From NCBI RefSeq assembly GCF_006345805.1, contig NC_043023.1, positions 11,904,001-11,968,000 on the forward strand: 64,000 bases of DNA, given 5' to 3'. Numbering within the stretch: position 1 is the first letter of the stretch; every line of letters begins with the position of its first letter. Source of the stretch: Octopus sinensis (lineage: Eukaryota). Shown piece by piece: positions 15,363 through 55,574 of the stretch. The position numbers and the translations under genes were made by a program. A model generated the notes under the pieces. It was not told where the DNA came from. It made no database searches and worked only from the letters and a program-made list of their open reading frames with translations.

Positions 15363-17603
15363 TCACCTGCATTTATGCGTTTTTAAGGTACTATTTACTG
15401 CAAATGACTTGCCACAGTCAGCACAGTGATATGGTTTCTCTCCTGTGTGAATGCGAGTGTGTCTAGTCAAGTCATTACTTACAGAGAATGATTTACCACA
15501 GATATTACAGTGATATGGTTTCTCTCCTGTATGCAAACGTTTGTGAGTAGTTAAGCTACCTGCTTGAGTGAATGACTTTCCACAGATATTACAGTGATAT
15601 GGTTTCTCTCCTGTGTGAATGCGAGTGTGTTTAGTTAAGCCATCACTTACAGAGAATGATTTACCACATATATCGCAATGATAGGGTTTCTCTCCTGTAT
15701 GAATACGTTTATGATGAATTACATCATTCATATGAGAGAATGTTTTACCACAAATATCACAGTGATATGGTTTTTCGCCTGTGTGAATGCGTTTATGTGC
15801 TGTGAAGGTACTATTTACTGCAAAGGACTTACCACAGATATTACAGTGGTATGGTTTCTCACCTGTATGCAAACGTATGTGAGTAGTTAAGCTACCTTTA
15901 TGATTGAACGATTTACCACAGACATCACAGTGATATGGTTTCTTACCTGTATGCAAACGTTTGTGAGCAGTTAAGCTACCTTTTTCAGTGAATGACTTTC
16001 CACAGATATCACAGCTATAAGGTTTCTCACCTGTATGCAAACGTATGTGAGCAGTCAAGTTACCTTTTTGAGTGAATGACTTTCCACAGATATCACAGTG
16101 ATATGGTTTCTCTCCTGCGTGAATGCGTTTGTGTTTAGTTAAGCTACCTTTTAGAGCAAATGACATACCACAGATATCACATTGATATGGCTTCTCTCCT
16201 GTATGAATACGAGTGTGTGTAGTTAAGTCTTTACTTCCAGGGAATGATTTACCACAGATATCACAGTGATATGGCTTCTCACCCGTATGAAGACGTTTGT
16301 GAATAGTTAAGCTACCTTTTTGAGAGAATGACTTACCACAGATATCACAGCGATATGGTTTATCACCTGTATGAATGCGTTTGTGAATACTTAGTACTAA
16401 GTTTCGAGCAAATGACCTACCACAGATATCACAGTGATAAGGCTTCTCTCCTGTATGAATACGTTTATGATGAATAAAATCATTCATCTGAGAGTATGTT
16501 TTACCACAAATATCACAGTGATATGGTTCTTCGCCTGTGTGAATGCGTTTATGAGCTGTGAAGGTACTATTTACTGCAAAGGACTTACCACAGATATTAC
16601 AGTGGTATGGTTTCTTACCTGTATGAATATGTGCATGAGTAGTTAAGTGAACTTTTTGAGAGAATGATTTACCACAGATATCACAGTGATATGGTTTCTC
16701 ACCTGTGTGAATGCGTTTGTGTGTAGTTAAGTTACTAAATCCAGGGAATGTTTTACCACAAATATCACAGCGATATTCTTTTTCTCCTGTGTGACTGCAT
16801 TTATGAGTTTTTAAGGTACTATTTGCTGTAAATGACTTGCCACAGTCAGCACAGTGATATGGTTTCTCTCCTGTGTGAATGCGAGTGTGTCTAGTTAAGT
16901 CATTACTTACAGAGAATGATTTACCACAGATATTACAGTGATATGGTTTCTCTCCTGTATGCAAACGTTTGTGAGTAGTTAAGCTACCTGTTTGAGTGAA
17001 TGACTTTCCACAGATATTACAGTGATATGGTTTCTCTCCTGTGTGAATGCGAGTGTGTTTAGTTAAGCCATCACTTACAGAGAATGATTTACCACATATA
17101 TCGCAATGATAGGGTTTCTCTCCTGTATGAATACGTTTATGATGAATTACATCATTCATCTGAGAGAATGTTTTACCACAAATATCACAGTGATATGGTT
17201 TTTCGCCTGTGTGAATGCGTTTATGTGCTGTGAAGGTACTATTTACTGCAAAGGACTTACCACAGATATCACAGTGATATGGTTTCTCACCTGTATGAAT
17301 ACGTGTGTGAGTAGTTAAGTTACATTTTTGAGAGAATGATTTACCACAGATATCACAGCGATATGGTTTCTCACCTGTATGAGAGTATTTATGGTGAGTT
17401 AAGTTACCTTTGTGAGAGAATGATTTACCACAGATATCACAGTGATATGGTTTCTCTCCAGTAGAAATGCATTTATGAGTAGTTAGGTTCCCTCTCCGAG
17501 AGAAAGACTTTTTGCAGATATCACAACAGTACGATAATTTTCCTCCTTCTTTTGTCATCTCTTCAGGAAATAAGCCATCCTCTACATTTCTCACATAACT
17601 CAT
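15363..17603 (-). CDS. C2H2 zinc-finger protein C (25 complete fingers plus a truncated 26th; 3 more fingers out of frame to 15095)
   Basis: 746-aa ORF. An 8-nt deletion near 15368 gives HKCR*. Paralog of B with near-identical flanks (9204-9790 vs 17604-18170). Acceptor ends at 17953. Confidence 0.85.
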
Positions 17604-19740: not shown

Positions 19741-21659
19741 GTAAAACCTATATTATTCCACCATTGTCTGATGCTAAAACTCAAGTGGTAAATTTTATGA
19801 TTTTTATTGCTATAATTACTTTCTGAAAATGTGAATTGTAATAAAAAAAACCAATCTGAATGATGACAAAAGATAGAAAACTAGAAACTGACTGCTTCTT
19901 TTCATGTCTGTTGCTTCTTTTACGCTATCCTGTTACCGAACTCCCAAAGCGTCAGGTACGGAAAGAAACCAACAAAACTTGTCAGGCAGTGATGATGGAG
20001 CGAGGTGGGATGGAGACGCGTGTGTGTTTCTCCTATAAGTGTTCGAAAACCATTGTTAGTTTGTTTACATTCCTGCAACGAAAGTCTCCAACACTATAAC
20101 TACCAAATGAAAAATAAGTTCTGCTGTTCCATTCCTGAACGGAACCTTCGAGCTGATACTTCGGGATGGTCGCAGTTTAATTAAAAGTGATACAAACATG
20201 TTTGTCTGTACTTAAGAATGTCCGTGTTTATTTATCTATGTACGTACACGTCCAACCATCCATCCATTCGTCTTTCCTTCCTGCTTTCTCCTTCCCTCCC
20301 TCATATTCCTCATCAATACATGTTAACTTTGCTATTGTTTCCACAGCTGGATGCCCTTCCTAGCGCTAACAACTTCGCAGTGTGCACTGGGTGCTTGTTT
20401 CTTACTACCAGCACTAGTGAGGGGTTGCCAAGTAACTTGTAAGATATGAAAAAATAAGACAAAAAAGCAGTTCACTTCGTTAAGTGGGAGGAGAGAGTTT
20501 AATAAAGGGCCTGGGATGTGATTTTGCACCAAGGAAGAAATGTTTTGCTATAGAGAAGATACATAGTTAACATACTTTTACCTAAGAGTGGGTGGGAGTA
20601 TCTGGGATGAAAATAAGATGTTGGTGACAAGATGCAAGGAAAAATCCCACAAAGTAAGAGACGATGTATGGAAGGTGTCAAGAGGTTGGGGATGGAGTTA
20701 TATGTGTGTGTGGGTGTCATCAGAAGTATGTCTCACTTCTAGCTACTGAAAGTAAAATTTATATATATATATATATGTTTGTGTGTGTGTGTAAACATTG
20801 GGCACTAATTTATTAAAGTTATTGAGTTGATGTCCAGTCATAGAGTGACCAAATGTTTTGCATCTACAAATGCTTTGTGAATGCAGAACCATTGATCACT
20901 CTATAATCTGACATTAAATTGATTACTTTTATATGTATGTATATGTATATATATATATAAGAATTTTTTGCGTAATGAGATAAAAAAAAAACCATAGTGT
21001 ATAAATTCTGTACTTGGAATGATCACTTTTAAATACTGTTGAATCTAACTCATAAGGTATTGGAATCTTACATTGTGTATAAACTTTAAACTTCGAATAA
21101 ACAATTTTAAATACTGCTGGATTTTTCTCACAAAGTATTGGAATCTTACATATCTACCATTCTGCCTAAAAAATGGATCTACAAATTCAATACCCCTACA
21201 TATCTCACATCTATTTTCTTTCCTCCACCTCACTCTCTATTTTGTATCCTATCTAAATTAACTATTAATTAAAAATCATCTCCAATGAAGGGATATAATT
21301 AATAAATATCCTGGAAACAGGTGTAAGACCTTCTATCTATAAATGTTCTAATATCTACACAGCCTTGGTTCTTTATAACATTTCACAAAAAATTCTTATT
21401 TACACACACTGACAGATGACCAATGTTGAACCCCTTATTCCTAAAATCTCCGAACCTGGAACTTAACTATGGTCAGTCTATGGCACTTATTCAGCATTAC
21501 CTGACGACTTTGAGTCTCAATGACACCATTACCTCTTAGATCCTATATATATATATATATATATATAATAGAAGTATTGGGGGTGATGTACAGATTTAAT
21601 ATATATGAAAGAAAAAAGATGTTCAGAATGCTGGATGGTTGTAAAAATATATATTCATA

Positions 21660-21975: not shown

Positions 21976-22784
21976 ATTTATTTATATATCACATATTATT
22001 ACTTCATATTAACGCTTTCAACTACTCCTGTAGTTTCATCAGAAATGTCAGTTTTAAAAGCTTTGCCTGTTTTTATATTATTGGTAAATGAAGTGGGGAG
22101 AGAGAGAGTGTGTGTGTGTATATAATGGGGAATAGAGGGAGGGAGAAGGTGAAAGAGAGAGAATATGGGTGTGTGTGTTTTAAAACTGTATTTTTCTCTT
22201 TTTTCTTTTTTTGGGTCTTTCTGCATTTTTTGGATGACCGTTGTAAGAAATGGAAAGAGAGAAGGAAAAAGAGGGTGTTTTTCAATAGTAGGTGTGTTGC
22301 TATGTACCTGGATCTTTCCTTCTATGTTTCCGATGAAGAGTTCCGCTTGAAACGTTAAACCCTCCTTCTTTCCTGAGCGTCCAATAATACTATATTTGTT
22401 CCACGTCATCGTGTTGTGTTTTTTTATGCTTTCTTGTTTGGATTAACTTATAAACATATATATATATATATCCACATACACTCACATATATATACACACA
22501 TATGGAGGAACCTATTGTGTGTGTACATTTTCATAAACATTCATTCATACTTATACTGTGTGTTCTTGAAAATGAGAAAGAAAGAAAGGGAAAAAAATAA
22601 AAATATAAAGAAAATGTGGCCATTCTTCACTTGGCACTCCCTTGGGTTTCTAAAAGAACAGGTGGTTGACCATTCAATGTTTGACATACTTATATATACA
22701 CCTAAACACATATCAATATGTGTACATACATACACGCGCACACACATATTGAAACCGCGATCCGATCCGACTGTGAGTCCGTTG

Positions 22785-23510: not shown

Positions 23511-24419
23511 ATATATACACACACACATGCATATATACATACACACACACATATATATAGATATACCAATGCACATATACATATGCATACATGCGCACAC
23601 ACACATATATACATATACAGACACACGCACACAAATATACTCACACACGCACATACACATATACATATATATACACACACATAATACACACATATCCATG
23701 CACACACACACACACAGCTAATGATGTAACATAAGTGCATTGTGTATAAAACTTGTTCAATCATATTCTCCCGGCAGCCATCTTCTCTATTAAACTGTTA
23801 AATTGACCTCTGCAAAGGTCAACTTTGTCATGTCATCATCAATGAGTTGATCTTTCTGCAAAACGAACTCCACCAGCCCTGCACCTGCTCCTGCCCCACC
23901 CTTGCTCCCTTTCAAAAAACCCCAAAATATCAACATAAACAAGAAAAATTTCAAATTATTTTGCTAACCATGGTGCTGATACTGTTGCTGCTGCTGCTGC
24001 TGTTATTGTATTTGCTGTTGCTGCTGCTACTGTTGTTGTTGTTGTTGTCTATTCTGCACTTGACACAGTTAGTCCTTAATGCTTGTTCTTAGGCTGCACA
24101 GATAACTGTGCTTATATCTCTATCTTCTGTTGCATTGTTAATTTAAATTTGGCTGTGGTGAATCGAATCTACTTCATGCTTGCCAAATCCACTACATATG
24201 TGTATATATATAATATATTACATGTGCATAAACATACATTCACAAATGAAAACCGAAACACATCCTCACTAATTATATACTATTTATTTATTAATAATTT
24301 CGTACTTTATTTAGTTCTAGGTAAATGTTTTATCATATCTTTAATTTTTTTCTTTATGGTATGATTTAAGTATATAATTGTTGAATTGCTACATGGTGGT
24401 TCTTCTCTAATTTATATAC

Positions 24420-24797
<378 letters not shown>

Positions 24798-24814
24798 GAA
24801 ATCTGCAACACTAA

Positions 24815-26430
24815 TGTAGCCTAAGATAAACCCCTATACATAGCTATTGTGGACTTGGAGAAAGCCTTTCAAAGGGTCCCGCAATCCCTTATCAGGTGGG
24901 CAATGCAGAAACTGGGGATTGACTAATGGTTAATAAGGGCTGTACAGGCCCTATACAGAGAGGTCATTAGTAAGGTTAGGATTGGCAATGAGTATAGTGA
25001 AGAATTCCGGGTAGAAGTAGGGGTCCACTAAGGATTAGCCCTCAGTCCCCTTTTATTCATCATAGTCCTCCAGGCAATAGCAGAGGAATTCAAGACAGGT
25101 TGCCCTTGGGAGCTCCTCTATGCTGATGACCTGGCCCTCATAGCAGAATTACTACCGTAACTAGAGAAGAAATTTCAGGTGTGGAAGCAAGGTTTAGAAT
25201 CAAAAGGTGTTAGGGTCAATGTAGCAAAGACCAAAGTTCTAGTAAGTAGGAAGGCGAACTCATCACACACCCCCTTAGGTAGGCGGCCCTGCTCGATCTG
25301 TAGAAAAGATGTAGGTAGAAACTCCATAAAATGTACCCAGTGTAAGCTATGGACACATAAGAGGTGCAGCAACATCAAAGGAAAATTAACCGAGAAGATA
25401 GCTTTCATGTGCAGCAGATGCACAGGGGCAATAGACACCATTGATACTCAGAAAACAGATTCCATTACACTCCAGGGGAAGAAACTAGAAGTAGTTGATA
25501 GCTTCCGCTACCTGGGTGGCCAAGTTAGTAGTGGAGGTGGGTGCTCAGAGAGAGTTACCACTAGAATAAGAATAGCCTGGGCAAAGTTCAGAAAGCTTCT
25601 ATCCCTACTGGAGACAAAGGGCCTCTCGCTCTGAGTGAAAGGTAGATTGTACAATGTATGTGTGCGAACTGTCATTCTTCACGGCAGTGAAACATGGGCC
25701 ATGATTGCTGAGAACATGCGTAGGCTAAAAAAAAATGAAACTAGCGTGATCTGCTAGATGTGTAATGTCAGTGTGCAACACAACAAAGTGTAAGTGCCCT
25801 GAGAGAAATGCTGGACATAAGAAGCATTGGATGTGGCGTGCAAAAGAGACGTTTGCGCTGGTATGGTCATGTACAACAGATGGATGAGGAGAGCTGTATG
25901 AAGAAGTGCCACTCTCAAACAGGGTAGAGGTAGACCCAGGAAGATATGGGATGAGGTAGTCAAGCATGACCTTCGAATGTTGGGCCTCACAGAGGCAATG
26001 ACGAAAGACCAAGACCTCTGGAGATATGCTGTGACTGCAAAGACCCAGCAAATAAAGTGAGTTCACAGCTGTATCCCACACCAGTTGTACAGAACCAGCC
26101 CCAGCTCACTCAAAAGTACCTTGGATCGTAGGGCAACATGCTGTGCTTGAGAAGACCTACTGAGTCAAGTACATCAACATCAAAGTGAAAATCAAATGGA
26201 AATTGTAGTCGTGATACCCATGCCAGTGGCACATAAAAAGCACCATCCGAACGTGGCTGATGACAGCACCGCCTTGACTGGACTCTGTGTCAGTGGCAAG
26301 TGAAAAGCACCAACCAATCGTGGTCATTACCAGCCTCCTCTGCTGGTGGCACATAAAAAGCACCCACTACACTCATGGAGTGGTTGGCATTAGGAAGGGT
26401 ATCTAGCTGTAGAAACACTGCCAGATATTG
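24815..26430 (+). mobile_element. 5'-truncated, degraded RTE LINE (RT with embedded PHD finger, plus 3' UTR)
   Basis: [19 protein letters not shown] and CSIC..CTQC..H..C..CSRC motifs; several stops. Same family as 48961-53500. Confidence 0.85.
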
Positions 26431-27985: not shown

Positions 27986-28500
27986 CTGTCTCTGTCACAC
28001 ACAGACAGAAAGAGAGAGAAATCAACAGAAAAAGTCGAGCTTTTAACAAATTTCCATAGGAAGTGGTTATCCGAAGTTTTAGACATTCCTTCTTCAGGGA
28101 ACAAGACTAAAATAATGAGAAATATGGAAGAGATTAACCTCCTATAAGTTAGAAAGAAAACTGATTGTTTTTATTTAATTTCACTCCTGTCAACTTCTTC
28201 CTGTACAAGGACTCTCTCCGAAAAGTTGGATTTTCCACTCACCATGGTAATTTTGCCGTACACTTTCCATTCATTACAAGTAGACAAGAGACGTCTTTCC
28301 AATGCAGACCATCACCAATGTCTTTGAATTCTGTGAAGGCATTCAATCACGCGTTCAATGCATTCACTCAAACTGCCACTGTATATAATGTGTAATTCTA
28401 TTTACAAATGATAATTATTATTATTTAATTATTGTAACATAATCCTGTTGATTAAATGTAAAATCTGAAAATCTAAAAGTTTTGTTTTCTTCTTTTTCAG

Positions 28501-30863
28501 GTTTGGCAAGAACAGAAAGTTACGATATTTCTCAAAGTGGTAAATGGATCAACAAACCTTTTTCTCCTTTTAAACTAGAAACTGTTTTTTCAATTCCGTT
28601 TCTTTACTCAACTCAGTTTTTAGCCACTTTTTTTAAAAACCTTTTTTCCAATCAGCTCAATTTCATTTAACATCACAAAAAATATTACAGGTATGGAAAA
28701 GTGGACGTTAGAATGTTGTTGATGATGATGATGATGACGATTGATGATGATTGATTGATGATGATTGATAATTGATGATGATGATGATGATGATTGATGA
28801 TTAATGATGATTGATGGTGATTGAGTTGTATAATTATTAAGGATCCGACAGGCTGCAGGACTTTGACAAGATCCAATGACTGCGGAGAGGGAGAGATAGC
28901 TGAAGGGAGAGAAAGGCTGTAACCAGTGAAGACAGTGCAGGAAGGGAAGAGGACATAATGGAAATAAGGGATGGGGTTGTTCTGGCAGGGTGGGGGAAAT
29001 AAACGGTAATGGAAAGAAAATGGCAAGGAGTGATATGTGACGATTCTGGTTCCAAATGAATACAACCCCTGAGTAGTGCCATTGACAGATGAGTGATGGA
29101 GAACTGGGTGTTAAGGGAACGAGATGTGGGGAAAGCTTGATGAGGGAGAAGAATAGTTTACAAGCATAAACAGAATGCATTTTGGACATCATCTTTTACT
29201 GGGATGGACGAGTCTTCTCAATCATTGTGTTTTGTCAATCATCTCAGTCTTTTGTCATCTCCTCTTGAGTTCAGCCTTCACCGCTTTATCCCATGTCTTC
29301 CTGGGTCTCCCTCTTCAACAAGTTCCATCCACTTAAAGCACTTCTTTAAACAGCTGCCCTCATCCTTATGCATCACATCACCAAACCATTGCAGTCTCCT
29401 TTTCCGTAGCCTTCATCTGTTCCCTCTTTTGCCTAATTTTTCTCTTGATACTTTAACACTTTTGTATGTACACTGTGGAAGCACATGGCCTAGTGGTTAG
29501 AGCAGCAGACACGCGGTCGAGGGATCGCGGGTTCGAATCTCAGACCGGGCGATGTGTGTTTTTATGAGTGAAACACCTAAGCTCCACGCGGCTCCGGCAG
29601 AAGGTAATGGCGAAACTTCTGCTGATTCTTTCGCCACAACTTTCTCTCACTCTTTCCTCCTGCATCTTGCAGCTCACCTGTGATGGACCAGTGTCCCATC
29701 CAGGTGGGGAACCTATATGCCAAGAAACCGGGAAACTGGCCCTTATGAGCCAGGCAAGGCTCGAGAAGGAACAAACAAGTATGTACGCTGGCATTGCACA
29801 TCCAAAGGAACATACTAGCTTTATTCCTCTCTATTCTTTACACGTCCTCTGCATTTAGGGCCCATCTCTCACTATCATGTAGCTTTGCTGTTCATACATG
29901 AACATCATACAATGTGCCTTTCACTCAGAGAGAACTTAAGTTGCCCAAGCTGTTTGCTTCTTCAGAGACGACCGTATCATGTCAAAAGCTTTCTGCAGGT
30001 CAACAAATACCAATTGCAATGGTTTACTTTGAGCTAAATACATCTCTTGCAGTTGCTTTACTCAGTAGATGGCAGCAGTAGTCCTTCTTCCTGGCAGAAA
30101 ATCAAACTGTATCTCATCTAGTCTAATTCTGTTTCTAATTAATTATAACTTTTTCGACCTGGTCAATCAATTTTAAGGCCTCTCCTTTATGCTTGTAACA
30201 TCTGACTACAACTTGATTTCCTTCTCAAGCGATGCCAGGCTCATAAGGGCCAGTTTTCTGGTTTCAGTGGCATAGAAATTTCTGTACAACTTGATTAACT
30301 TTATGGGTGACAAGGGTGTATCTTACTCTGCACAATCTTAGTAAACAAAAGGTTCGTTTATATGGGGTCGTTTGTTTCCAGTTTACTAGGTAAAACATGA
30401 CTTGACTCTTTGCTATTCAATAGATTGGGATATTAGGACAGGAAGAGCATCCAATTGTACACAAAGAAAATGCTGCTCCCAAGTAGGGAAAAGCAGGTGT
30501 TAAAATGGCAATGATGAAAAAAAAAACCTGAAATTTTTCATATGGACAACCAATCACTAATGTTAATTTATCTTTTTACTTTAGAACCAGTTGCATTAGG
30601 AGACAATGTCACACTTCATACTGAAGTAGCCGAGATGACAGGAATTGTTTTCTGGAAAAACGACAATGGTAGATATGAATGTAACCCGACTTGTTATAAT
30701 TACGGTAACCATGAAGTTACACAAGATGGTAGCAAATCTACTCTTTTGATCCGAATGGTATCAGAACAAGATTTCACTTGGCGTTTTTGTGACTTGTATC
30801 TCTGCTCTGCAAAATATACCTTAATGACAAAAGGTAAGGAAATTACTTTTGCTAATAATAATG

Positions 30864-30895
<32 letters not shown>

Positions 30896-32157
30896 GATGA
30901 TGATGATGATGATGATTCTTTCTAATTATAGCACAAGGTCAGGAATGTCATGTGGAAGTGGTTCTTTGTTTATATTTAGTCGGTCCTTTATTTCATCAAC
31001 CCCAAAGGGATGAAAGGCAAAGCTGACCTTAGCAGTATTTGAACTCAGGACAGAAAGAGTCAGAAGAAATTCCACTGAACACTTTTTTCTGGTGCAACAA
31101 CAACAACAACAACAACAACCTCAGTACAAATATTTTTATAATACTTCAGCAAATTCAAAGTTTGTATCACATAGCATTGCTGTTCATATACAGGCATCAT
31201 ACAATGTGACTTTCACTCTGAGAGAACACAACCCATCGCCTGGTACAGGAAACGAAACCACAATCTTACGATCATGAGTCCAACACCCTAACTATTAAGC
31301 CACGTGCCTCCACCTAATGCTATATAACCCTTCTAAATAATCGACTCATCTGTTGACCTTATATTTTTGTGTTAGAAAGAAGAAATTTAATCCCCTTTGC
31401 TAATGCAACATAACCTTTCTAATTGATGGATTAATCTGAAGGGGAACATCTAATCATTTAGACATAATAATCTGGGATATTGGTGTGTGTTGATCCGTTT
31501 CTTACCATATTTCTGCTGAAATGCATTGCCTTTGTTTCAATAAATTTTGGAAATGATAAAGAATTTAACCTTATCATTACTAAACTATTGTTTGGAACAT
31601 AAGGAAGGTTTTCTTTAGATCTCTTCAAAACTGAGGATTTGTACAATAGAAACAAAAGCAATTTTAAGCAGGATGGTATGAAAAGGGTTAAACCTGGCTG
31701 ATATTACGATTTTTAAAAAATTAAAAACAGAAAGTATATGACGTATATTTGCCATTTAAATATGGCTAACCCCTAAGGGTGGATGCTACTGTAGTTTGTA
31801 GCCCCAGGAGGACACCTCCTCCAACTGGCTATAAGCACACTGGCTACAGATGGAGGAGGTGTCCTCCTGGGGCTACAAACTACAGTAGCATCCACCCTTA
31901 GGGGTTTGCCATATTTAAATGGCAAATATACGTCACGATGTGTTGTAGCTACTGTTTATAACTCACTCTGAGATTTATTATTGCTTAAAAAGTATATGTT
32001 TTACTGTTCATCTTTTGCAGGTGAAAAAACAGAAACGACGACAACAAAAGATGCTGAAACTAATGAATCAGAAGACAGCTTACCAACCTATGCCTATGTC
32101 TTAATTTTCATATCTCTATTTGTAGCCATCGTTATCATTAAGAAAGGCCAGGAATGA
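28501..32157 (+). CDS. Spliced gene for an Ig-like single-pass membrane protein: exons 28501-28539, 30585-30833 and 32021-32157; first coding exon uncertain
   Basis: Canonical AG/GT sites with all introns in phase 1. Joined frame: GLARTESYDISQS-EPVALGDNVTL...IVFWK...STLLI...DFTWRFC...TK-GEKTETTTTKD...YAYVLIFISLFVAIVII-KKGQE*. Confidence 0.75.
29476..29770 (+). mobile_element. SINE family 3
   Basis: TGGCCTAGTGG and GGTTCGAATC boxes followed by the SINE body. Confidence 0.75.
31739..31935. repeat. Fold-back palindrome, 85-bp arms with 1 mismatch and a 27-nt loop
   Basis: Arms 31739-31823 and 31851-31935 are reverse complements. Confidence 0.95.
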
Positions 32158-32580
32158 TATTGGCCAACCTTATTACTGACTTTCACTGATCTGGGTAGAA
32201 TAGTGGATGTTAGAATGTTGTTGTTGATGATGAAAACGATGATATGCGATTGATGATGATTGAGGATAATAATGATTGATGGTGATGTCTGATGATTGAT
32301 GATGATGCGATTGATGATGACTTCAACTGAAAAACTGTACTTTTTTTTCAATCAGTTTTGAAAATGGTGAAGAATTTCGTAAGTTAGCTTTGCCATTATC
32401 AATCTGGTGTTTGGAACATAAATTAACATATATTAAACATAAATTAACATAAAATTTTGAATGAAAGGTTTTAATTTTGATCACTTTAACCCTTTTGTTA
32501 CCATAAACTTGTCCTTTACAGGTGCCGGTGGCACGTAAAAAGCACACAGCATATTCTGTAGAGTGGTTGGTGCTAGGAAA

Positions 32581-32785: not shown

Positions 32786-34733
32786 TAGTTAGTTAGTTAA
32801 TTTGGCTCAAAAGCAAATAGCAAGGCCATGTAGAGGGACATGGAGTTAAATACAGGGTGGTGTTCATGTAAAGAGTTCAGGCCACTTGAGGCAAAGGGAG
32901 GCTTTGAACAAAGCGGTAGTCGGCATCTTCACCATCTTGTCTGGCAGCTTGTTCCACGGATCCGCAACCCGGACGGTGAAAGCTCCTCTCCTTTGATTGA
33001 GATGAAATCGTCGCAGGTAGAGCTTTTCGGAATGACCCCGCAGCCGACGCTCTGGAGCAGGAGTGAAGAACAGCTCTTTCGAGAGGTTACACTTTCCGCT
33101 TATGATGTTGTGGACGAGAATGAGATCACCACGGCGGCGGCGTTTTTCAAGAGAATAAAGGTCGAGCGTCCTCAGCCTTTCTTCATAAGACAAATTTTTG
33201 AGACCATGAACCATGCGGGTAGCCAGCTTCTGGACTCTTTCGAGATGCTGTATGTCTTTGAGGAGATAAGGAGAAGAGGCTTGAATCCCGTACTCCAATA
33301 TGGGTCTCACCAGTGTGACATAGAGTGGTAGGAATATGGCTGCTGTGAGCATTCCGAATGACCGTCGAATCAAGAACAGAATTCCGCGTGCTTTGTTGGC
33401 AGCATGGACGCACTGGGCTGAAGGCGAAAAGGAGGAATCCACCAAGATACCCAGGTCCTTTACCTGATCGGTCCTCTCCAGCAGCAGACGACCCGGCTCG
33501 AAATCAAGTTGAGTTGCAGGAGGAGAGCCAACAGGCAGATGACAGCACTTTGACACGTTCAGACACAGGTCCCATTCGTTAGACCACTTCCAAATTTGGT
33601 GGAGGCATCGACGAAGATCCTCTATATCACCGCGAGGAGCGACCAGTTTGATATCGTCGGCAAATAGAAGGGTGTGTTGCGTGAGGTCGTCGGGCAAGTC
33701 ATTTATGAAGACTAAGAACAATAAGGGCCCAAGCACTGAACCTTGAGGCACGCCACTGCTTGCACTGGAGACGTCGGACCGTGAACCATTAACTTGGATT
33801 TGGAAGGAGCGATCTGAGAGGAAGGCACCAACCCATCGTACAATATCCGGATGGAAACTATATGCTTGAAGCTTGACAAGTAATAGGCGGTGGTTTACCG
33901 AGTCAAAAGCTTTGGCAAAGTCCAATAAAACGATGTCAACAGCATCACTATCATCGAGGATGCGCATCACCAATTCTTCCATTACCAGTAAGTTGGTCAA
34001 GCATGATCTCTTTGGCACGAAGCCGTGTTGGGAATCAGAGATAGAGCTGTGTTTTGGAGGTGGAGCATCATACTTTTCTGAAGGATGGTTTCGAACATCT
34101 TGCTGATTATTGATGTAAGGGAAACCGGTCGGTAGTTAAGCGGGTCTTCGCGGCTCCCTTTCTTGAAAATTGGGCAGATTATCGCTGTTCTCCAGTCCAC
34201 AGGTATAACACCCGTCGCCAATGACATATTGAATAGACATGTTAAGGGCTCGCAGATGACCGGAGCCAACGCTTTGATAACCCGTGGGTGTATGCTGTCA
34301 GGGCCGTGACCCTTGTTGACATCGAGGCCTTGAATAACATGTTTGACTTCGTCCCGCGTGATGACCAATCGAAGCATTGGAGGTACCAATCTATCAAATG
34401 GAGGGGGTTCACGACCATCATCTTGTTTGAAAATAGTTGAAAAAGCCTCGGCAAATAATTGACTCTGTTGATAAGGGTCCCCAATCGATACACCTGTTGA
34501 GTCTACCAACGTTGCAATCTGGTTGTTCAAGCGGGAATTCCGTTGGACATGGGCAAAGAAGGTTTTTGGATTGCTACTGGCATTTGCCGCGATTTTGTAT
34601 TCATAACTGAAGCGTTCTTCCTTTTCAATTTTCACGGCTCGGTCTCATTGAGTTTTGTACACCTCAAAAGCTGCAGTCGAATCCAGATTTTTGAATTCAG
34701 CCCAAGCAATATCTCTGAGTCGACGTTCTCGTT
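32786..34733 (-). mobile_element. 5'-truncated CR1-like LINE with a frameshift near 34010
   Basis: LDFAKAFDSV, GVPQGSVLGPLLF and FADD motifs; (AACT)n tail; TATAGT duplicated at 32780-32785 and 34734-34739. Confidence 0.9.
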
Positions 34734-37700: not shown

Positions 37701-38577
37701 AAAATTTTAGAATAAAAAAAAAAACACTGCCTATCTTAATTTTGAAAAATAAATTTAAAAAAAACTCCCATTATTTATGGAATGACACAGAATATTTGTC
37801 TATCCTTCACTCACCGATTTACGTGTCTTTCTGACTGTTTGTCTGTCTGTCTCTCTCCATCTCCATCTCTCACCCTCTGCACTATAACGCTGACATATCG
37901 TTTGGTGTTAAGGGAGACTACTCACAAATATATTGTACGTGAGTTATGTCCCTTGAACAATGCCTTGAAACCGCTTGACTGCCATTTTTCTGAAATTAAC
38001 CTGTTAAGGTAGACTACTCTCAAGTATAGGTGGTTCATACTTAGCTCTTTGTGGGTAGTAAAGAAATAGGTTTATATTTGAGAGTTCTCTCCCTTGACAC
38101 CATTTATCTGCAAAATAGATTTTATCGTCCGACGGTTACTGGTTTCAATTCTTGGACAACCGCCATGCTGGAGCACCACATCAACGTGTTTAATCACACT
38201 CATCTACGGCTGGGCTTATCTCTCTTCAGGCTGCTACTCATTCCTTCGTTCTCCTTTTGTCGAATTGCTAAGTTACGATGACGTAAACAGCCAAAACCGA
38301 AAATGTAGCGGTGACTAGGGACAAACACAAGTCACAGATAGGGAAATATATGCGTGTGCATGTGTGTGTGTGTGTGTGTGTCTGTATGTGTGTGTGTGTT
38401 TGTGTGTCTGTATGTGTGTGTGTCTGTGTGTGTCTGTATGTGTGTGTGTGTTTGTGTGTCTGTATGTGTGTGTGTCTGTGTGTGTCTGTATGTGTGTGTG
38501 TCTGTATGTGTGTGTGTGTTTGTGTGTCTGTATGTGTGTGTGTCTGTGTGTGTCTGTATGTGTGTGTGTTTGCGCGC

Positions 38578-41040
38578 GCGCCATGTGAACCTCTCAGGGA
38601 AGGCCACCCTCAAGATTGTCCAGACCTATGCTCCCACAAGTGCCAGCGACGACGACGAGGTGGAAGAATTCTATCGACAACTAGACAAAGGGCTGGCTAT
38701 GAAGTCCACTTACACTGTCGTGATGGGAGACTTCAACGCAAGGGTTGGACATGGACGACAAGGAGAGGAGTACGTCGGGCGATTTGGCATGGGAGAGAGA
38801 AACGAGAGAGGAGAACGTTTGGCTACCATGGCAGAGGCGAGGCAGCTCTACATGGGAAACAGCCTATTCAGGAAGAGGGAGAGGAAGAGATGGACTTGGA
38901 TATCGCCGAACTCTGAGCACCGAAGCGAGATCGACTACATCCTGGTTGATAAGCGACGCATATTGCATGACGTCTCCGTCGTGACGCCATTCAACACCGG
39001 CAGCAATCATCGTCTGGTAAGGGCGAGGGTCGTCATCGACGAGAAGAGGGAGAAGATGGCGTTATATTTGGCGTCAAAGGGAAAACGTGTCCGAGTCTAC
39101 AACGAGGCAAAGCTGCAGGAAGCCATCATGCAGGAAGACTGGTGCCAAGGAGACGACATAGACGATGACTACAACTCACTGATAGGGAAACTAAAGGAGT
39201 GTTTAAGGAAGGCTAAGGGTGTATGCCCAAGAGAAAAGAATGGAAGAATCTCGGAAGAAACTACGAAGTTACTCGAGAAGAGGAAAAATATGAAGAGGAC
39301 TATTGAGGATGACCTTGAATATTCCATTCTCAGCAGAGTGATTCGTCAGCAACTAAAGAAAGACTTTGAGGCATACCGGATGGAGAAGCTCTTAAAAGCC
39401 GCAGAGGAAAAGAAGAGCCTCAAGAAATGCAAGAGGGACATGGTACTATATAGATCGGAGGTGACGGCCCTGAAAAATACAGATGGAATACCGGTCAACC
39501 AGAAGAGCGAGATGGAAAAAGTTTGTGAAGACTTCTACACCAAGCTCTTTAAGTCTACCAGAAATGTCCAGCCGTTACCACCACGTCAACAGGAAGAAAA
39601 CGTGCCACCTATCTTTGTCAGTGAGGTTGAAAGAGCCATCGGCTCGATGAAAAACGGAAAGGCTCCAGGGAAAGACGGTATAACATCGGAGGTGCTAAAG
39701 TCAGGCAGAGAGCAGCTCTGGAACATCCTCGCTGAGCGATTTGCGCACTATCTAGACGAGGGAAGAATTCCCTCGCAGTGGAAAGAGTCAAATACTATCC
39801 TGCTGTATAAGAAGGGCGACAGAGAAGATCTAATGAACTACCGACCCATATGCTTGCTGTCTCACGTGTACAAGCTGTTCACGAAGATAATTCTGAACAG
39901 GTTATCACGTCGTCTCGACGAACAACAACCGAGGGAGCAAGCAGGCTTCCGAAGAACTACAGCACAATGGACCATATATTTGCTCTAACGCAACTGCTGG
40001 AGCGAGCAAATGAGTACAAGCTGCCTCTTTGCGTTGCGTTTATAGATTATGAGAAGGCCTTCGATAGCGTCGAAACCAACGCAGTGCTGAACTCGCTGCA
40101 GAGGCAAGGAATCGAAGCGCAATATGTGCAGCTGCTCAGAGAGGCAAATTCCGGATGCACCACCGACATAGCTCTACTGTCATCACCCATACGAGCGCCG
40201 GTCGAGAAGGGAGTGAAGCAAGGAGATACAATCTCCCCAAAACTTTTCACTGCATGTCTCGAACAGATCATCAGAGGCATCGACTGGCAAGGTGGTGTCA
40301 ACATCAATGGCGAGCTCCTCACTCACCTCCGTTTCGCTGACGACATCGTACTCATCGCTGAAAACATGGATCAGCTTCAGACCATGCTGACGGAGCTCGA
40401 CATCAAAAGTTCTGCAGTAGGTCCCAAGATGAACCGCATGAAAACAAAGTACATGCAGTCAGACAATGTAAATATATGCCGGGATATCAAAAAGGAGATC
40501 TCACGGAGAGTAAGGGCCGGATGGAAGGCGTTCAATGGCATAAGAGATGTGCTCAAGGGAAGGTTGGACAGGACCACCCGTGCCAACCTCATTAACAGTG
40601 CAGTTCTGACTGCAATGTTATATGGTAGTGAAACATGGGCTACCACAAAGAGAGAAGAGCAAAGACTGGTAACGGCTCAAAGAGCCATGGAAAGGTCAAT
40701 GCTTGGTATCTCGTTGAGAGAGCACATAAGTAGCAAGATCATCAGAAAGAAGTCTGGCGTGAGAGATGTCATCGCAGAGTATACTTGCAGCAAGTATAGA
40801 TGGGATGGACACGTCGCCCGGCTCACCGATAATCGGTGGACGCACGCATTTGTCAAGTGGTACCCGCGTGAGCGGAAAAGACCACCCGGAAGACCTCGAT
40901 GACAGTGGAGTTACGATTTCAAGAGGATGATTGGGATCACGTGGAACAGAAAGGCGCGATCCAGAGGAGTGGACAGCGTGCTGTGACCAGCAGTGTCAAA
41001 TGGACGCCTGACGGACTGGTCGGTCAAGGTGATCAAGGTG
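38578..41040 (+). mobile_element. 5'-truncated RTE/BovB-like LINE (APE endonuclease C-part and RT), frameshift near 39955
   Basis: VMGDFNARVG, EIDYIL, REQAGF, GVKQGDTISPKLF, RFADD and LYGSETW motifs. Confidence 0.92.
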
Positions 41041-41099
<59 letters not shown>

Positions 41100-41216
41100 T
41101 GTATATATATATATATGAATGTATATATATATATATGAATGTATAAATATATATATATATGAATGTATATATATATATATATATATATGAATGTATATAT
41201 ATATATATATATATGA

Positions 41217-41311
<95 letters not shown>

Positions 41312-41338
41312 TGTGTATATATATATATATATATATGA

Positions 41339-41437
<99 letters not shown>

Positions 41438-41464
41438 CACACATATATATATATATGTATATAT

Positions 41465-41501
<37 letters not shown>

Positions 41502-41515
41502 AATATATACACACG
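41040..41515. repeat. (TA)n array punctuated by GAATG
   Basis: Direct inspection. Confidence 0.9.
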
Positions 41516-41519
41516 AGAT

Positions 41520-42310
41520 GATATCTTGTCGTGAACGACAAATGGAGGTTCAGTAAAATAAAGTGTCAACCATGTTCTCTGGGCGCGAATGTGTCTCTTG
41601 ATGCCCCCTGGTGCCTTGAAAATCTTTTGGCAAATCAAACCAGTTGAGTGCTCACTTTGTTTCAGTGCTTCTGGATCATTTACCATGTGTTTTCTCGAGT
41701 GGAAAATAATGCCTGCTTTGCTTCGTGCCACAAAACCACAATGACACGCGAGGTTTCTATTTAGTGGAGCAGTGTTTTGCCAGCGTACCTTTATGCTTGC
41801 ACGAAATTGTTCCCGGTGTTGGAGTCGATTTTTCTCAAACCTTAGAAGAAGCAGGACTAGTGCTAGGTCCTTGCGATCTGGTGCTTTGGTTTCCCAGATA
41901 GAAAAGGGAACATTGCATCGTATCAGATTGTCTTTTAGTTTTTCTTTGAAGCACAGGAATGGCTTTCCAACTTACCTTCCTGACAGGAATTGGCCAAAGA
42001 GAAGTTGCTTCAGAATACGTGAGAGATGACCTGACTATCTAAACTGTATTTTGATGAGGATGACTTTAATACCTGATATGTTGCATTCTGATCATACCTC
42101 ACTGTTATGAATATGGTCCCTTGGTTTTATGTTGGAGGTAGTACGCACGCATCGCATATGAAATGCGTCAAGCTGGTTGATGTGCTTTTGGTACAAAGTC
42201 CAAGATTCAGCACCATAAAGCAATGTTGTCAAGACAACCGTCTTATATTAACTTTCACCATTTACGATACCTTGTGGTTGTTTCATAGCTTGTGATTTCC
42301 CAATTCTGGA
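41520..42310 (-). mobile_element. Degenerate RTE LINE 3' fragment
   Basis: Minus frames give LYGAESWTLYQKHINQLDAFHMRC and [17 protein letters not shown]. Confidence 0.65.

Positions 42311-43079: not shown

Positions 43080-45138
<2,059 letters not shown>

Positions 45139-55007: not shown

Positions 55008-55048
<41 letters not shown>

Positions 55049-55542: not shown

Positions 55543-55574
<32 letters not shown>

What the first reader, a model, noticed from the sequence alone, without database searches (positions are those of the whole stretch)
28501..32157. Hidden Ig-like single-pass membrane gene inside the ZNF cluster
Three phase-1 exons join into a short N-terminal piece, an 83-codon Ig-like domain, a Thr/Glu-rich stalk, a 17-residue hydrophobic helix and a KKGQE tail. 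The domain has G.NVTL, a C-strand Trp and STL.I, but His replaces the B-strand Cys, DFTWRFC replaces DxGxYxC, and there are CNPTC and CDLYLC pairs. N-glycosylation sequons NVT and NES are present. A symmetric phase-1 domain exon is typical of the IgSF. A hydrophobic MSVLKALPVFILL exon candidate (ATG 22045, donor 22084) would make a good signal peptide with GLARTES, but it is one base out of phase, implying a micro-exon, an indel or coincidence. This is a candidate lineage-specific surface receptor or adhesion molecule.
Basis: partly seen in the sequence, partly recalled or inferred. Interest (0 to 1): 0.7.

Follow-up and report, generated by a model that had tools for sequence, protein, structure and literature searches.

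The report
Small octopus Ig-like membrane protein gene
The three exons are real and belong to a four-exon Octopus sinensis gene for a 148-residue membrane protein with one divergent immunoglobulin-like domain; it is a recently duplicated, partly annotated member of an uncharacterised mollusc gene family, so it is a useful annotation fix rather than a new kind of thing.

Summary
Exons 28501-28539, 30585-30833 and 32021-32157 have AG/GT borders, are phase 1, and encode the stated motifs. The window is Octopus sinensis CM016885.1, about 11.904-11.968 Mb. RefSeq annotates this locus as LOC118768220, but only from an internal Met at 30635.

It is a 22-nt exon at 20218-20239 (MSVFIYL/C), in phase and identical to exon 1 of the complete paralog LOC115225463. 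The four exons give an intact 148-aa ORF.

AlphaFold2 (pLDDT 89) and Foldseek place the 83-codon exon in the Ig fold (titin, twitchin, IgLON, Neph1). Pfam Ig models stay below threshold, and the B-strand Cys of the canonical B-F disulfide is replaced by His.

The domain defines an unnamed family in octopods and Haliotis, with signature W...CxxxC...STLxI...WxF. Its genes are built from [39-nt linker exon + 249-nt Ig exon] modules, and this gene has one module.

Five copies about 96-98% identical exist in O. sinensis. Only two keep exons 1-2. Among the copies dN/dS is about 1.2, yet the Ig exon is identical to the O. vulgaris counterpart.

The likely product is a type I surface glycoprotein with no signalling tail. 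Whether it functions is uncertain.

The parts
20218..20239 (+). Exon 1 (coding part). ATG plus MSVFIYL plus the first base of Cys8; phase-1 donor T|GTACGT. It supplies most of the hydrophobic core of a short signal peptide.
   Evidence: tblastn of XP_029652280.1 (P0001) gives a 100% match at 20218-20241. The sequence was read and is identical to exon 1 of LOC115225463 in L001. Joined to the other exons it gives an intact 447-nt, 148-aa ORF. An in-frame TGA lies at 20188-20190 with no ATG between (read).
28501..28539 (+). Exon 2. A 39-nt phase 1-1 linker mini-exon (C)LARTESYDISQS(E). It holds the end of the signal peptide, the probable cleavage region and the Y-x-I-x-Q linker motif.
   Evidence: Splice context. 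It is homologous in size, phase and flanking intron ends to the 39-nt linker exons of O. bimaculoides LOC106867739. It is present in P0001 and P0002 and absent from three truncated paralog loci.
30585..30833 (+). Exon 3. A 249-nt phase 1-1 exon encoding the whole divergent I-set-like Ig domain (residues 21-103). It carries the NVT sequon and Cys53, Cys57, Cys89 and Cys94.
   Evidence: AF2 pLDDT 89.1, all-beta. Foldseek top hits are all Ig domains at probability 1.00 and TMq 0.58-0.75. Family HMM E=2.7e-36. 0 of 249 mismatches to the O. vulgaris counterpart.
32021..32157 (+). Exon 4. Thr/Glu-rich stalk (GEKTETTTTKDAETNESEDSLPT, with the NES sequon), a transmembrane helix (YAYVLIFISLFVAIVII), the tail KKGQE and the TGA stop.
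   Evidence: The Kyte-Doolittle 19-residue mean is 2.43 at residues 125-143. The juxtamembrane motif (S/I)(L/I)PTYA-VLI is shared with P0009.
30635..32157 (+). Extent of the RefSeq CDS of LOC118768220 (isoforms X1-X3, 111/109/107 aa). It starts at the internal Met38 and so lacks the signal peptide and strands A-B of the domain.
   Evidence: L007, fetched with P0039, is 100% identical to window 20635-42157, and its gene is at L007 10001-11523.
30542..30584 (+). An in-frame ATG inside intron 2 (MDNQSLMLIYLFTL) that reads through the acceptor into exon 3. RefSeq uses the equivalent start in paralogs that have lost exon 2.
   Evidence: ORF 30542-30925. P0003, P0041, P0045 and P0046 begin M(G)NQSLMLIYLFTLEPV.
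30834..30925 (+). Read-through of the exon 3 donor: ...[32 protein letters not shown]. This is a possible intron-retention product without a membrane anchor.
   Evidence: The equivalent tail GKEIT(S)ANNNNNNSF* ends RefSeq models of O. bimaculoides LOC106871836 and LOC106872842. The first ~90 aligned intron bases are 87% identical to O. bimaculoides L003.

Best explanation
This is a real protein-coding gene of Octopus sinensis, RefSeq LOC118768220, which is annotated there only from an internal Met. It has four coding exons: 20218-20239, 28501-28539, 30585-30833 and 32021-32157. The 148-residue product is most likely a type I single-pass membrane glycoprotein.

Its parts are:
- a short N-terminal signal peptide (MSVFIYLCLA/RTES);
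- a 13-residue linker;
- one divergent I-set-like immunoglobulin domain. It lacks the canonical B-F disulfide and has Cys pairs in a CxxxC motif after strand C' and in CDLYLC at the F-G hairpin;
- a roughly 23-residue Thr/Glu-rich stalk that is probably glycosylated;
- one transmembrane helix;
- a five-residue tail, KKGQE, with no signalling motif.

It is the one-module member of an unnamed family of Ig-repeat membrane proteins in octopods and Haliotis. Genes of that family are built from repeated [39-nt linker exon + 249-nt Ig exon] modules.

The gene was carried along in recent segmental duplications of the surrounding zinc-finger cluster. Five near-identical copies exist, and only this one and LOC115225463 keep the signal and linker exons.

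Shown here: the gene structure, the fold, family membership, the copy history and the hydrophobic helix.

Inferred: cleavage of the signal peptide, surface display and glycosylation. It is also inferred that the protein works only by Ig-mediated binding, as a ligand, co-receptor, adhesion tag or decoy, and would need a partner for any signalling.
For: Structure of the gene:
- Splice sites and phases were read.
- Exon 1 was found by tblastn at 100% identity and is identical to the paralog's exon 1.
- The four exons give an intact 148-aa ORF.
- The same four-exon structure is in RefSeq XP_029652280.1 at L001 and in the O. vulgaris locus L009.

Fold:
- AF2 on a 34-sequence domain alignment gives pLDDT 89.1 and pTM 0.81, all-beta.
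- The top 50 Foldseek PDB hits are all Ig domains. They include titin I21 (8ovu), twitchin Ig26 (3uto), IgLON5 (6dld) and Neph1 (4ofd, TMq 0.71), all at probability 1.00.
- A family profile against PDB sequences gives titin at E=0.0016 and obscurin at 0.07.
- The Haliotis relative P0011 passes the Pfam I-set cut-off (56.8 bits against 23.7).

Family:
- 26 representatives at E<=1e-3, from Octopus, Argonauta and Haliotis, with 1-5 repeats plus a signal peptide and a TM helix.
- W25 and C34 are invariant, and C38, S53, I57, W67 and D71 are nearly invariant.
- The modular 39+249-nt phase-1 exon pairs are seen in L003.
- A one-module relative occurs as an uninterrupted ORF on a contig from an octopus meta-transcriptome.

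Membrane anchoring: Kyte-Doolittle mean 2.43 over residues 125-143, followed by KK.

Constraint: the Ig exon has 0 of 249 mismatches to the O. vulgaris counterpart, against 2.3% in the flanking introns (Fisher P=0.006).
Against: - No transcript of this exact locus could be examined. The exact 148-aa product is not in the 15-billion-protein collection, and RefSeq starts its models at Met38.
- The signal peptide is very short. Its hydrophobic run is 8 residues and the n-region has no basic residue, against 10-13 hydrophobic residues in several relatives. No signal-peptide predictor was available.
- Among the five O. sinensis copies, exons 3-4 show 14 nonsynonymous and 3 synonymous variable codons over 303 N and 81 S sites. 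That gives dN/dS of about 1.2, with changes spread over the domain, stalk, TM helix and tail.
- The window against L001 gives pN/pS of 0.8, with coding divergence equal to intron divergence.
- Three of the five copies have lost exon 2.
- Pfam Ig models do not reach their cut-offs on this protein.
- No function is known for any family member, and no paper mentions them.
Confidence: 0.7

Rival explanations
1. The locus is a structurally intact but functionless passenger. It would be a young duplicate dragged along by segmental duplication of the zinc-finger cluster, drifting neutrally toward pseudogenisation like its truncated sister copies. Any transcripts would be noise.
For: dN/dS is about 1.2 among the five copies, with substitutions in every part of the protein. 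pN/pS is 0.8 and exon divergence equals intron divergence against L001. Three of five copies lack exon 2. Against O. vulgaris, the non-Ig exons carry 6 nonsynonymous and 3 synonymous changes plus a 24-nt stalk duplication. A frameshifted family exon exists elsewhere, in L002 copy B. The signal peptide is shortened relative to relatives. No close single-module ortholog was found in O. bimaculoides proteins; the best domain identity there is about 41-44%.
Against: The ORF and all six splice sites are intact here, in L001 and in O. vulgaris. The Ig exon is identical over 249 nt to the O. vulgaris copy in a 2.3% neutral background (P=0.006). RefSeq reports three isoforms at this locus that differ by 6-12 nt at the exon 3/4 junction, which suggests transcript evidence (this is an inference). 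The number of substitutions is small, so power is low.
Confidence: 0.3
2. The main products are not the membrane form but alternative forms. One would be a protein started at the intronic ATG 30542 (MDNQSLMLIYLFTL...). Another would be a soluble form made by retention of intron 3, ending ...GKEITFANNN...SF* at 30925.
For: The ORF 30542-30925 is open in the window. RefSeq uses the intronic start in LOC115231351 and LOC118768178, and uses the read-through tail as the CDS end in O. bimaculoides LOC106871836 and LOC106872842. The start of intron 3 is 87% identical between the window and O. bimaculoides L003, although the adjoining exon half is only 57% identical.
Against: The intronic 'signal' is simply a translated polypyrimidine tract. 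It is used in models of copies that have lost exon 2. The conserved intron stretch runs into a microsatellite and a SINE-like repeat, so its conservation may not reflect coding. Family members with good signal peptides and the TESY-linker exon support the four-exon form.
Confidence: 0.15
3. The RefSeq reading is right: translation starts at Met38 (30635). The product would be a 107-111-aa protein without a signal peptide. With its hydrophobic helix five residues from the C-terminus, it would be a tail-anchored protein with a truncated domain facing the cytosol.
For: This is the only CDS annotated at this locus. The helix lies at residues 127-143 of 148.
Against: Such a product lacks strands A and B of a domain that the model folds as a complete sandwich. 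The upstream exons are intact, in phase, and identical in structure to a complete RefSeq model 350 kb away. Sequons, Cys pairs and a Thr-rich stalk make sense only in the secretory pathway (inference). All multi-module relatives have N-terminal signal peptides.
Confidence: 0.05
4. One reading: the signal peptide comes from an exon at 22045-22083 (MSVLKALPVFILL), joined through a missing micro-exon or an indel.
For: The ATG, the hydrophobic reading and a GTAAAT donor are present. The stretch is 99% conserved in L001.
Against: It is one base out of phase. No annotated relative contains it. Its conservation is within the range of the surrounding intron over so short a stretch (95-98% across blocks). 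An in-phase exon identical to the paralog's exon 1 exists at 20218.
Confidence: 0.02

Closest known systems
Octopus sinensis LOC115225463 (XP_029652280.1, 148 aa, 'uncharacterized protein'), with the near-identical loci LOC115225077, LOC118768178 and LOC115231351 and the O. vulgaris model CAI-series P0002
   Same: It has the same four-exon structure and the same length, and is 96% identical in protein. The surrounding 29 kb is colinear at 92-98%.
   Different: It is a different locus about 350 kb away. There are six amino-acid differences. At the window's own locus RefSeq annotates only the part from Met38. Three of the sister loci have lost exon 2.
Multi-module relatives: O. sinensis LOC115225115 (4 domains), O. 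bimaculoides LOC106867739 (3 domains), O. vulgaris/sinensis LOC115231405 (2 domains), Haliotis rufescens LOC124119024 (5 domains); all uncharacterised
   Same: They share the domain signature (W, CxxxC, STLxI, WxF.D), the 39-nt linker exon plus 249-nt Ig exon in phase 1, a signal peptide, and a C-terminal TM helix with a related juxtamembrane motif. The window's domain is 50% identical to the membrane-proximal domain of LOC115231405 and 31% identical to a Haliotis repeat.
   Different: The window's gene has a single module, a shortened signal peptide and a 5-residue tail instead of 15-60 residues. Most relatives place their second Cys pair elsewhere (WKC...KEC, or N- and C-terminal Cys in Haliotis) rather than at FC....C.
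I-set immunoglobulin domains (Pfam PF07679), for example titin I21, twitchin Ig26 and obscurin
   Same: These are the best structural matches and the best profile-sequence matches. Shared features are the size of about 85-90 residues, the core Trp in strand C, the D-x-x-x-aromatic-x-C motif on strand F, and one domain per phase 1-1 exon.
   Different: Sequence scores are below the Pfam cut-offs. The B-strand Cys is His, so the canonical B-F disulfide is absent. The extra CxxxC motif is not an I-set feature. Titin-type domains are intracellular, whereas this one has sequons and a stalk.
Extracellular adhesion Ig domains: IgLON5/NEGR1/OPCML, Neph1 (Kirrel), sDscam Ig1
   Same: They are fold neighbours at TMq 0.60-0.71, and they are cell-surface proteins that act by Ig-Ig binding.
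   Different: Identity is 17-22% only. Those proteins have 2-5 or more domains and a GPI anchor or a signalling tail. No shared family-specific motif was seen.
Small single-Ig type I membrane proteins of vertebrates, such as sodium-channel beta subunits and myelin P0, and the disulfide-less V domains of CD2/CD48 (recalled from general knowledge)
   Same: The overall layout is the same: signal, one Ig domain, a short stalk, a TM helix and a short tail. Like CD2 domain 1, it has an Ig domain without the canonical disulfide. CD48 and CD2 appear as weak profile hits (E 0.26-0.37).
   Different: There is no detectable specific homology. The analogy is architectural only and was not tested.

Membership tests
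Immunoglobulin superfamily (Ig-like beta-sandwich; Pfam clan Ig, I-set PF07679 / Ig_3 PF13927 / ig PF00047) | Two-sheet Greek-key beta-sandwich of about 70-110 residues | tested here: met
   The AF2 model has pLDDT 89.1, pTM 0.81 and only beta strands. All top Foldseek PDB hits are Ig domains at probability 1.00 and TMq 0.58-0.75.
Immunoglobulin superfamily (Ig-like beta-sandwich; Pfam clan Ig, I-set PF07679 / Ig_3 PF13927 / ig PF00047) | Score above the curated Pfam gathering cut-off for an Ig model | tested here: not met
   Window protein: Ig_3 16.6 bits against a cut-off of 30. Domain alone: ig 17.0 against 21.8, and Ig_3 15.9 against 30. Only 5 of 34 family domains give even weak I-set hits. 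The cut-off is passed only by the five-repeat Haliotis relative P0011 (I-set 56.8 bits).
Immunoglobulin superfamily (Ig-like beta-sandwich; Pfam clan Ig, I-set PF07679 / Ig_3 PF13927 / ig PF00047) | Canonical disulfide between strands B and F | tested here: not met
   The B-strand position is His (VTLHT) in the window and is never Cys in the 34-sequence family alignment. The F-strand Cys (DFTWRFC) is present in this subfamily only.
Immunoglobulin superfamily (Ig-like beta-sandwich; Pfam clan Ig, I-set PF07679 / Ig_3 PF13927 / ig PF00047) | Conserved core Trp in strand C | tested here: met
   W25 of the domain (W44 of the protein) is invariant in 34 of 34 family domains and lies in the modelled strand 24-26.
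Immunoglobulin superfamily (Ig-like beta-sandwich; Pfam clan Ig, I-set PF07679 / Ig_3 PF13927 / ig PF00047) | One domain per symmetric phase 1-1 exon (typical of the superfamily, not obligatory) | tested here: met
   The 249-nt exon 30585-30833 is phase 1 at both ends. The same holds for three Ig exons of O. bimaculoides LOC106867739.
Unnamed molluscan CxxxC Ig-repeat membrane protein family (RefSeq 'uncharacterized' LOC115225115, LOC106867739, LOC115231405, Haliotis LOC124119024) | Domain signature W ... C-x3-C ... S-T-L-x-I ... W-x-F-x-D | tested here: met
   All positions are present in the window (W44, C53/C57, S72-T-L-L-I76, W86-R-F-C-D90). They are invariant or at least 90% conserved in alignment A2. 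phmmer E-values to members range from 1e-38 to 1e-5.
Unnamed molluscan CxxxC Ig-repeat membrane protein family (RefSeq 'uncharacterized' LOC115225115, LOC106867739, LOC115231405, Haliotis LOC124119024) | Gene built from [about 39-nt linker exon + 249-nt Ig exon] modules, all phase 1 | tested here: met
   The window has 39 nt (28501-28539) plus 249 nt (30585-30833). L003 has 39+249, 39+249 and 36+249 nt, with the same intron ends (ttttacag|GT ... G|gtaaatg). The 96-residue repeat period in P0007 fits 13+83 codons.
Unnamed molluscan CxxxC Ig-repeat membrane protein family (RefSeq 'uncharacterized' LOC115225115, LOC106867739, LOC115231405, Haliotis LOC124119024) | N-terminal signal peptide and C-terminal transmembrane helix | tested here: inconclusive
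   The TM helix is clear (Kyte-Doolittle 2.43). The N-terminus aligns with relatives' signal ends (CLARTESYDISQSE against CSAKTESYEIIQNE), but its hydrophobic core is only 8 residues, and no signal-peptide predictor was available.
Type I single-pass membrane protein | Cleavable signal peptide, one TM helix, positive residues on the cytoplasmic side | tested here: inconclusive
   The helix at 127-143 followed by KK is shown by direct reading and. The function of the signal peptide and the topology were not testable here. Tail-anchored or GPI-type alternatives were not run through predictors.

The most novel reading that the evidence does not exclude
The family could be a rapidly diversifying recognition system of molluscs, acting in immune, self/non-self or gamete recognition. 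The binding half of the Ig domain (strands A'-D, including the CxxxC loop) would be remodelled faster than the neutral rate by diversifying selection or by patchwork gene conversion among paralogs. New specificities would be generated by segmental duplication inside the zinc-finger clusters.

The hint is this. Against O. bimaculoides LOC106867739 domain 3, the first 150 nt of the window's Ig exon are 57% identical. The upstream intron is 81% identical, the last 99 nt of the exon 82% and the downstream intron 87%. The two exon halves also have different nearest relatives.
Probability: 0.12. Interest if true: 0.6.

Novelty: new member of a known kind. Interest (0 to 1): 0.3.

Why it matters
The practical result is an annotation correction. 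LOC118768220 of O. sinensis can encode a complete 148-residue signal-Ig-stalk-TM protein, using exons at 20218 and 28501 that its RefSeq CDS omits.

More broadly, the domain defines a family that is unnamed, uncharacterised and invisible to Pfam at its curated cut-offs. It is a family of Ig-like membrane proteins in octopods and abalone, with a distinctive CxxxC motif and a tidy two-exon module. Describing it would improve IgSF inventories in molluscs, where cell-surface recognition molecules are poorly known.

It also shows that a non-ZNF gene can be amplified passively by the segmental duplications that expand octopus zinc-finger clusters, and that most of the resulting copies are already truncated.

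None of this overturns current understanding.

Tried and rejected
1. It is out of phase, is absent from all relatives, and is replaced by the in-phase exon at 20218.

2. A search for further family exons in the window, using a six-frame translation and the family HMM, found none beyond 30585-30833. tblastn likewise found no second copy.

3. A profile search of the 5.8-billion-protein word-indexed database with the family alignment returned only the six close paralogs already known. It added nothing to the taxonomic range.

4. Literature searches by LOC numbers, XP/UniProt accessions and topic words returned no paper on any family member.

5. The exact 148-aa product and P0004/P0007 were not on record in the gene-position index, so there is no transcript-level evidence for this locus.

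6. I tried to replicate the 'exon more diverged than its introns' pattern on a second species pair, O. bimaculoides LOC106872842 against O. sinensis LOC115225395. It failed: the exon was 73% identical and the poorly alignable flanks 50-64%. The second O. sinensis copy there is frameshifted. I therefore do not claim family-wide diversifying selection.

7. No tRNA gene was found in the introns, despite a tRNA-like SINE head. No AATAAA lies on the + strand between the stop codon and 33154, so the 3' end is undefined.

9. C-terminal KKXX ER retrieval was considered and rejected. The lysines are at -5 and -4 (KKGQE), not at -3 with -4 or -5. This rests on direct reading and general knowledge.


Full report
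**Observation**

Exon 28501-28539 is 39 nt, exon 30585-30833 is 249 nt (83 codons), and exon 32021-32157 is 137 nt including the TGA stop. Each follows a pyrimidine tract plus AG. The first two are followed by GTAAAT and GTAAGG. All three are phase 1.

The translation contains every motif listed: GDNVTL with His at the B-strand Cys position, FW, CNPTC, STLLI, DFTWRFC, CDLYLC, and the sequons NVT and NES. It also has a 23-residue stalk with 7 Thr and 5 Glu, a hydrophobic stretch with a Kyte-Doolittle mean of 2.43 over residues 125-143, and the tail KKGQE.

**Where the window comes from and what is annotated**

A locus fetched with the RefSeq protein XP_036370225.1 (LOC118768220 isoform X1) is 100% identical to window 20635-42157 over 21,523 nt. 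The window is therefore Octopus sinensis GCA_006345805.1, CM016885.1, at about 11,904,001-11,968,000.

At this locus the recorded CDS runs only from 30635 to 32157. It starts at Met38 inside the Ig exon, in three isoforms of 111, 109 and 107 aa that differ by 6-12 nt at the exon 3/4 junction. The locus lies inside a 1146-aa gene model on the minus strand.

C2H2 zinc-finger ORFs lie on the minus strand at 2581-3795, 7779-9203, 15363-17603 and 57267-58508. The gene is therefore not unknown to RefSeq. However, the 28501 exon and the first 17 codons of the Ig exon are outside its CDS, and the exact 148-aa product is absent from the protein collection.

**The real first exon**

The closest full-length relative is XP_029652280.1 (LOC115225463, 148 aa, 96% identical). 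It begins MSVFIYLC-LARTESYNISQS. tblastn finds MSVFIYLC at 100% identity at window 20218-20241.

The sequence there is aagaATGTCCGTGTTTATTTATCTAT|gtacgt. That is a phase-1 donor, and the exon is base-for-base identical to exon 1 of the paralog. An in-frame TGA lies 30 nt upstream with no intervening ATG.

Joining 20218-20239, 28501-28539, 30585-30833 and 32021-32157 gives an uninterrupted 447-nt ORF of 148 aa. The same four-exon structure is present at L001 and at the O. vulgaris locus L009. The 22045 exon is not needed, and no relative contains it.

**Fold**

The exon-3 peptide, searched against 1.84 billion cluster representatives, gave 26 proteins at E<=1e-3. From these I cut 34 non-redundant domain segments and aligned them.

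- AlphaFold2 on that alignment gave mean pLDDT 89.1 and pTM 0.81, with strands only.
- Foldseek against the PDB returned only Ig domains among its top 50, all at probability 1.00 and TMq 0.58-0.75. They include titin I21, twitchin Ig26, IgLON5/NEGR1, Neph1 D1, OPCML, sDscam Ig1 and antibody and TCR V domains.
- A profile of the alignment against PDB sequences put titin (E=0.0016) and obscurin (0.07) first.

By sequence the domain sits at the detection limit. Ig_3 scores 16.6 bits and ig 17.0 bits on the window protein, both below their cut-offs. Only the five-repeat Haliotis relative passes the I-set cut-off (56.8 bits).

It is a divergent Ig domain. The B-strand Cys is His. The family-wide conserved Cys pair is the CxxxC right after strand C' (C34/C38 of the domain). 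The second pair, FC....C at the F-G hairpin, is specific to the membrane-proximal subfamily.

**The family and its module**

The relatives are all 'uncharacterized protein' entries of O. sinensis, O. vulgaris, O. bimaculoides, Argonauta hians, Haliotis rufescens and H. cracherodii. They have 1-5 copies of the domain, N-terminal signal peptides and C-terminal TM helices. In alignment A2, W25 and C34 are invariant, and C38, S53, I57, W67 and D71 are at least 90% conserved.

In O. bimaculoides LOC106867739 (L003) each domain is a 249-nt phase 1-1 exon preceded by a 39-nt (once 36-nt) phase 1-1 linker exon. The intron ends are the same as in the window (ttttacag|GT......G|gtaaatg). The 13+83 codons explain the 96-residue repeat period of LOC115225115. 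They also explain the 13-residue length difference between its isoforms (455 against 442 aa).

The window's exons 2 and 3 are one such module, and the family HMM finds no other module in the 64 kb. Its linker, CLARTESYDISQSE, aligns with CSAKTESYEIIQNE of a relative. Its juxtamembrane LPTYAYVLI aligns with IPTYAKVLI of LOC115231405. The membrane-proximal domain of LOC115231405 is the closest non-trivial relative, at 50% identity.

A one-module relative (P0014) is encoded without interruption on a 1,067-nt contig assembled from SRR3401912. A paper describes that run as an octopus meta-transcriptome (PMC11662614). At least one family member is therefore transcribed and spliced as predicted. This is not evidence for the window's own locus.

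**Copies and constraint**

Window 9601-38372 is colinear at 92-98% identity with the LOC115225463 region about 350 kb away. The block includes the adjacent ZNF gene. Three further O. sinensis loci carry exons 3-4 at 94-98% identity but have no exon 2 within 10 kb upstream: LOC115225077, LOC118768178 and LOC115231351. In L005 the alignment skips window 27990-29004, which contains exon 2. RefSeq models of those copies start at an intronic ATG or at Met38.

- Across the five copies, exons 3-4 have 17 variable codons, 14 nonsynonymous and 3 synonymous, over 303 N and 81 S sites. That gives dN/dS of about 1.2, with changes scattered over the domain, stalk, TM helix and tail.
- The window against L001 over the whole CDS has 6 nonsynonymous and 2 synonymous changes. 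Coding divergence is 1.8% and intron divergence 1.2-2.4%.
- The O. vulgaris counterpart (L009) is different. Its flanking introns differ by 2.3%, but the Ig exon differs at 0 of 249 positions (Fisher P=0.006). The other exons carry 6 nonsynonymous and 3 synonymous changes and a 24-nt in-frame stalk duplication.
- In a three-way comparison the three Ig-exon changes are all on the L001 side.

My reading is as follows. The duplications are recent passengers of ZNF-cluster expansion, and most copies are decaying. The window's copy is the best candidate for a maintained gene. The evidence for constraint is thin and limited to the Ig exon.

**An unexplained feature**

I aligned the window's Ig exon to the third Ig exon of O. 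bimaculoides LOC106867739. Identity by segment was:

| Segment | Identity |
|---|---|
| Upstream intron | 81% (120/149) |
| Exon codons 1-50 | 57% (dN 0.67, dS 0.57) |
| Exon codons 51-83 | 82% (dN 0.21, dS 0.20) |
| Start of the downstream intron | 87% (81/93) |

The two exon halves also have different nearest relatives. Codons 1-50 are closest to P0014 (52%). Codons 51-83 are closest to the membrane-proximal domains of P0008 and P0009 (64%), which match the first half at only 30-42%.

This fits either a gene-conversion mosaic or locally accelerated evolution of strands A'-D. A second species pair did not reproduce the pattern, so I leave it open.

**How it most likely works**

Shown here: the exon structure, the fold, the family, the TM helix and the duplication history.

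Inferred: the 8-residue hydrophobic core VFIYLCLA followed by RTES acts as a short signal peptide. Small residues sit at -3 and -1 for cleavage after CLA or after TES. The Ig domain and the Thr-rich stalk are then translocated and glycosylated, at NVT, at NES and at O-linked Thr. The helix at 127-143 anchors the protein, with KKGQE in the cytosol. With no signalling motif and no charged TM residue, the protein can only act by binding through its Ig domain, as a ligand, an adhesion tag, a co-receptor subunit or a decoy.

The alternatives are given as rivals with probabilities.

**Comparison and novelty**

Structurally it works like an I-set or adhesion-type Ig domain. Membership of the Ig superfamily is supported by the fold, the core Trp, the F-strand motif and the exon phase. 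It is not supported by Pfam thresholds or by the canonical disulfide.

Membership of the unnamed molluscan family is met on signature and on gene architecture. No member has a known function, and no paper mentions them.

This is a new member of a known kind. It offers a modest annotation gain and a small uncharacterised family worth naming, not a new kind of system.

Noticed in passing
window 9601-38372 vs L001 (CM016885.1:12269049-12300531): A block of about 29 kb is duplicated about 350 kb away at 92-98% identity. It contains a C2H2 zinc-finger gene (ORF 15363-17603, minus strand) and the Ig-like gene in head-to-head orientation, about 2.6 kb apart. The Ig-like gene has therefore been amplified as a passenger of ZNF-cluster duplication.
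   Followed up: partly
window 31739-31935: A near-perfect inverted repeat lies in intron 3. Its arms are 89 nt and 98% complementary, with a 19-nt loop. It could be a MITE-like element or a long hairpin. Its origin and any transcript are unknown.
   Followed up: no
window ~29470-29790: A tRNA-derived SINE-like element lies in intron 2, containing GGCCTAGTGGTTAGAGC...GGGTTCGAATC. ARAGORN calls no intact tRNA there. A 48-nt inverted partner pair lies at 29724-29771 and 30218-30265.
   Followed up: partly
window 28696-28821, 32198-32321; L008 3' UTR: The same repeat, GTGGA(C/T)GTTAGAATGTTGTTGATGATG... followed by (GAT)n, sits just after exon 2 and just after the stop codon. A related stretch is in the 3' UTR of the octopus transcript contig L008. 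It is probably a common octopus interspersed repeat.
   Followed up: no
window 30834-31100 vs L003 7981-8200: The first ~90 aligned bases of the intron after the membrane-proximal Ig exon are 87% identical between O. sinensis and O. bimaculoides paralogs, although the adjoining exon halves are only 57% identical. The stretch consists of gtaaggaaattact..gctaataataa, an (AAT/GAT)n run, ttctttctaatt and a SINE-like gcacaaggtcag... element. Read in frame, it gives the tail GKEIT.ANNN..SF* that RefSeq uses as the CDS end in some O. bimaculoides models.
   Followed up: partly
window 30585-30734 (codons 1-50 of the Ig exon): This half of the exon is about three times more diverged from O. bimaculoides LOC106867739 domain 3 than the exon's other half and both flanking introns. 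It also has different nearest relatives. It is either a mosaic or locally accelerated, and the question is unresolved.
   Followed up: partly
L009 (O. vulgaris OX597842.1:23427430-23445764), exon 4: The O. vulgaris counterpart carries a 24-nt in-frame tandem duplication in the stalk (TTTKDAER-TTTKDAET). Stalk length therefore varies between sister species.
   Followed up: yes
L002 31496-33400 (O. sinensis CM016885.1, LOC115225395 region): The 35-kb gene model spans two tandem copies of signal, linker and Ig exons. The Ig exon of the second copy is broken by frameshifts. This is a decaying family copy, or an assembly error, merged into one RefSeq model.
   Followed up: partly
window 32864-34635 (-), 38354-40902 (+), 43491-44582 (-), 51011-53497 (-), 25179-25634 (+): Long ORFs with reverse-transcriptase motifs (FADD/YADD boxes) are present. 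These are LINE-type retrotransposon fragments that fill much of the space between the ZNF genes (read from the translations).
   Followed up: no
window 49014-51084 (and 59594-60305): A G+C-rich minisatellite (GC 0.53) gives overlapping long ORFs on both strands with a repeating peptide unit (...GARQSWQTATKWMVLLRVTGT...). This is probably non-coding tandem repeat rather than a gene.
   Followed up: no
window 24386-24811, 40911-41731, 54379-56069: Long (TA/TG/CA)-rich microsatellite tracts generate spurious 130-310-aa ORFs (YIYIYI..., CVCVCV...) on both strands. GC skew dips strongly at 52-56 kb.
   Followed up: no
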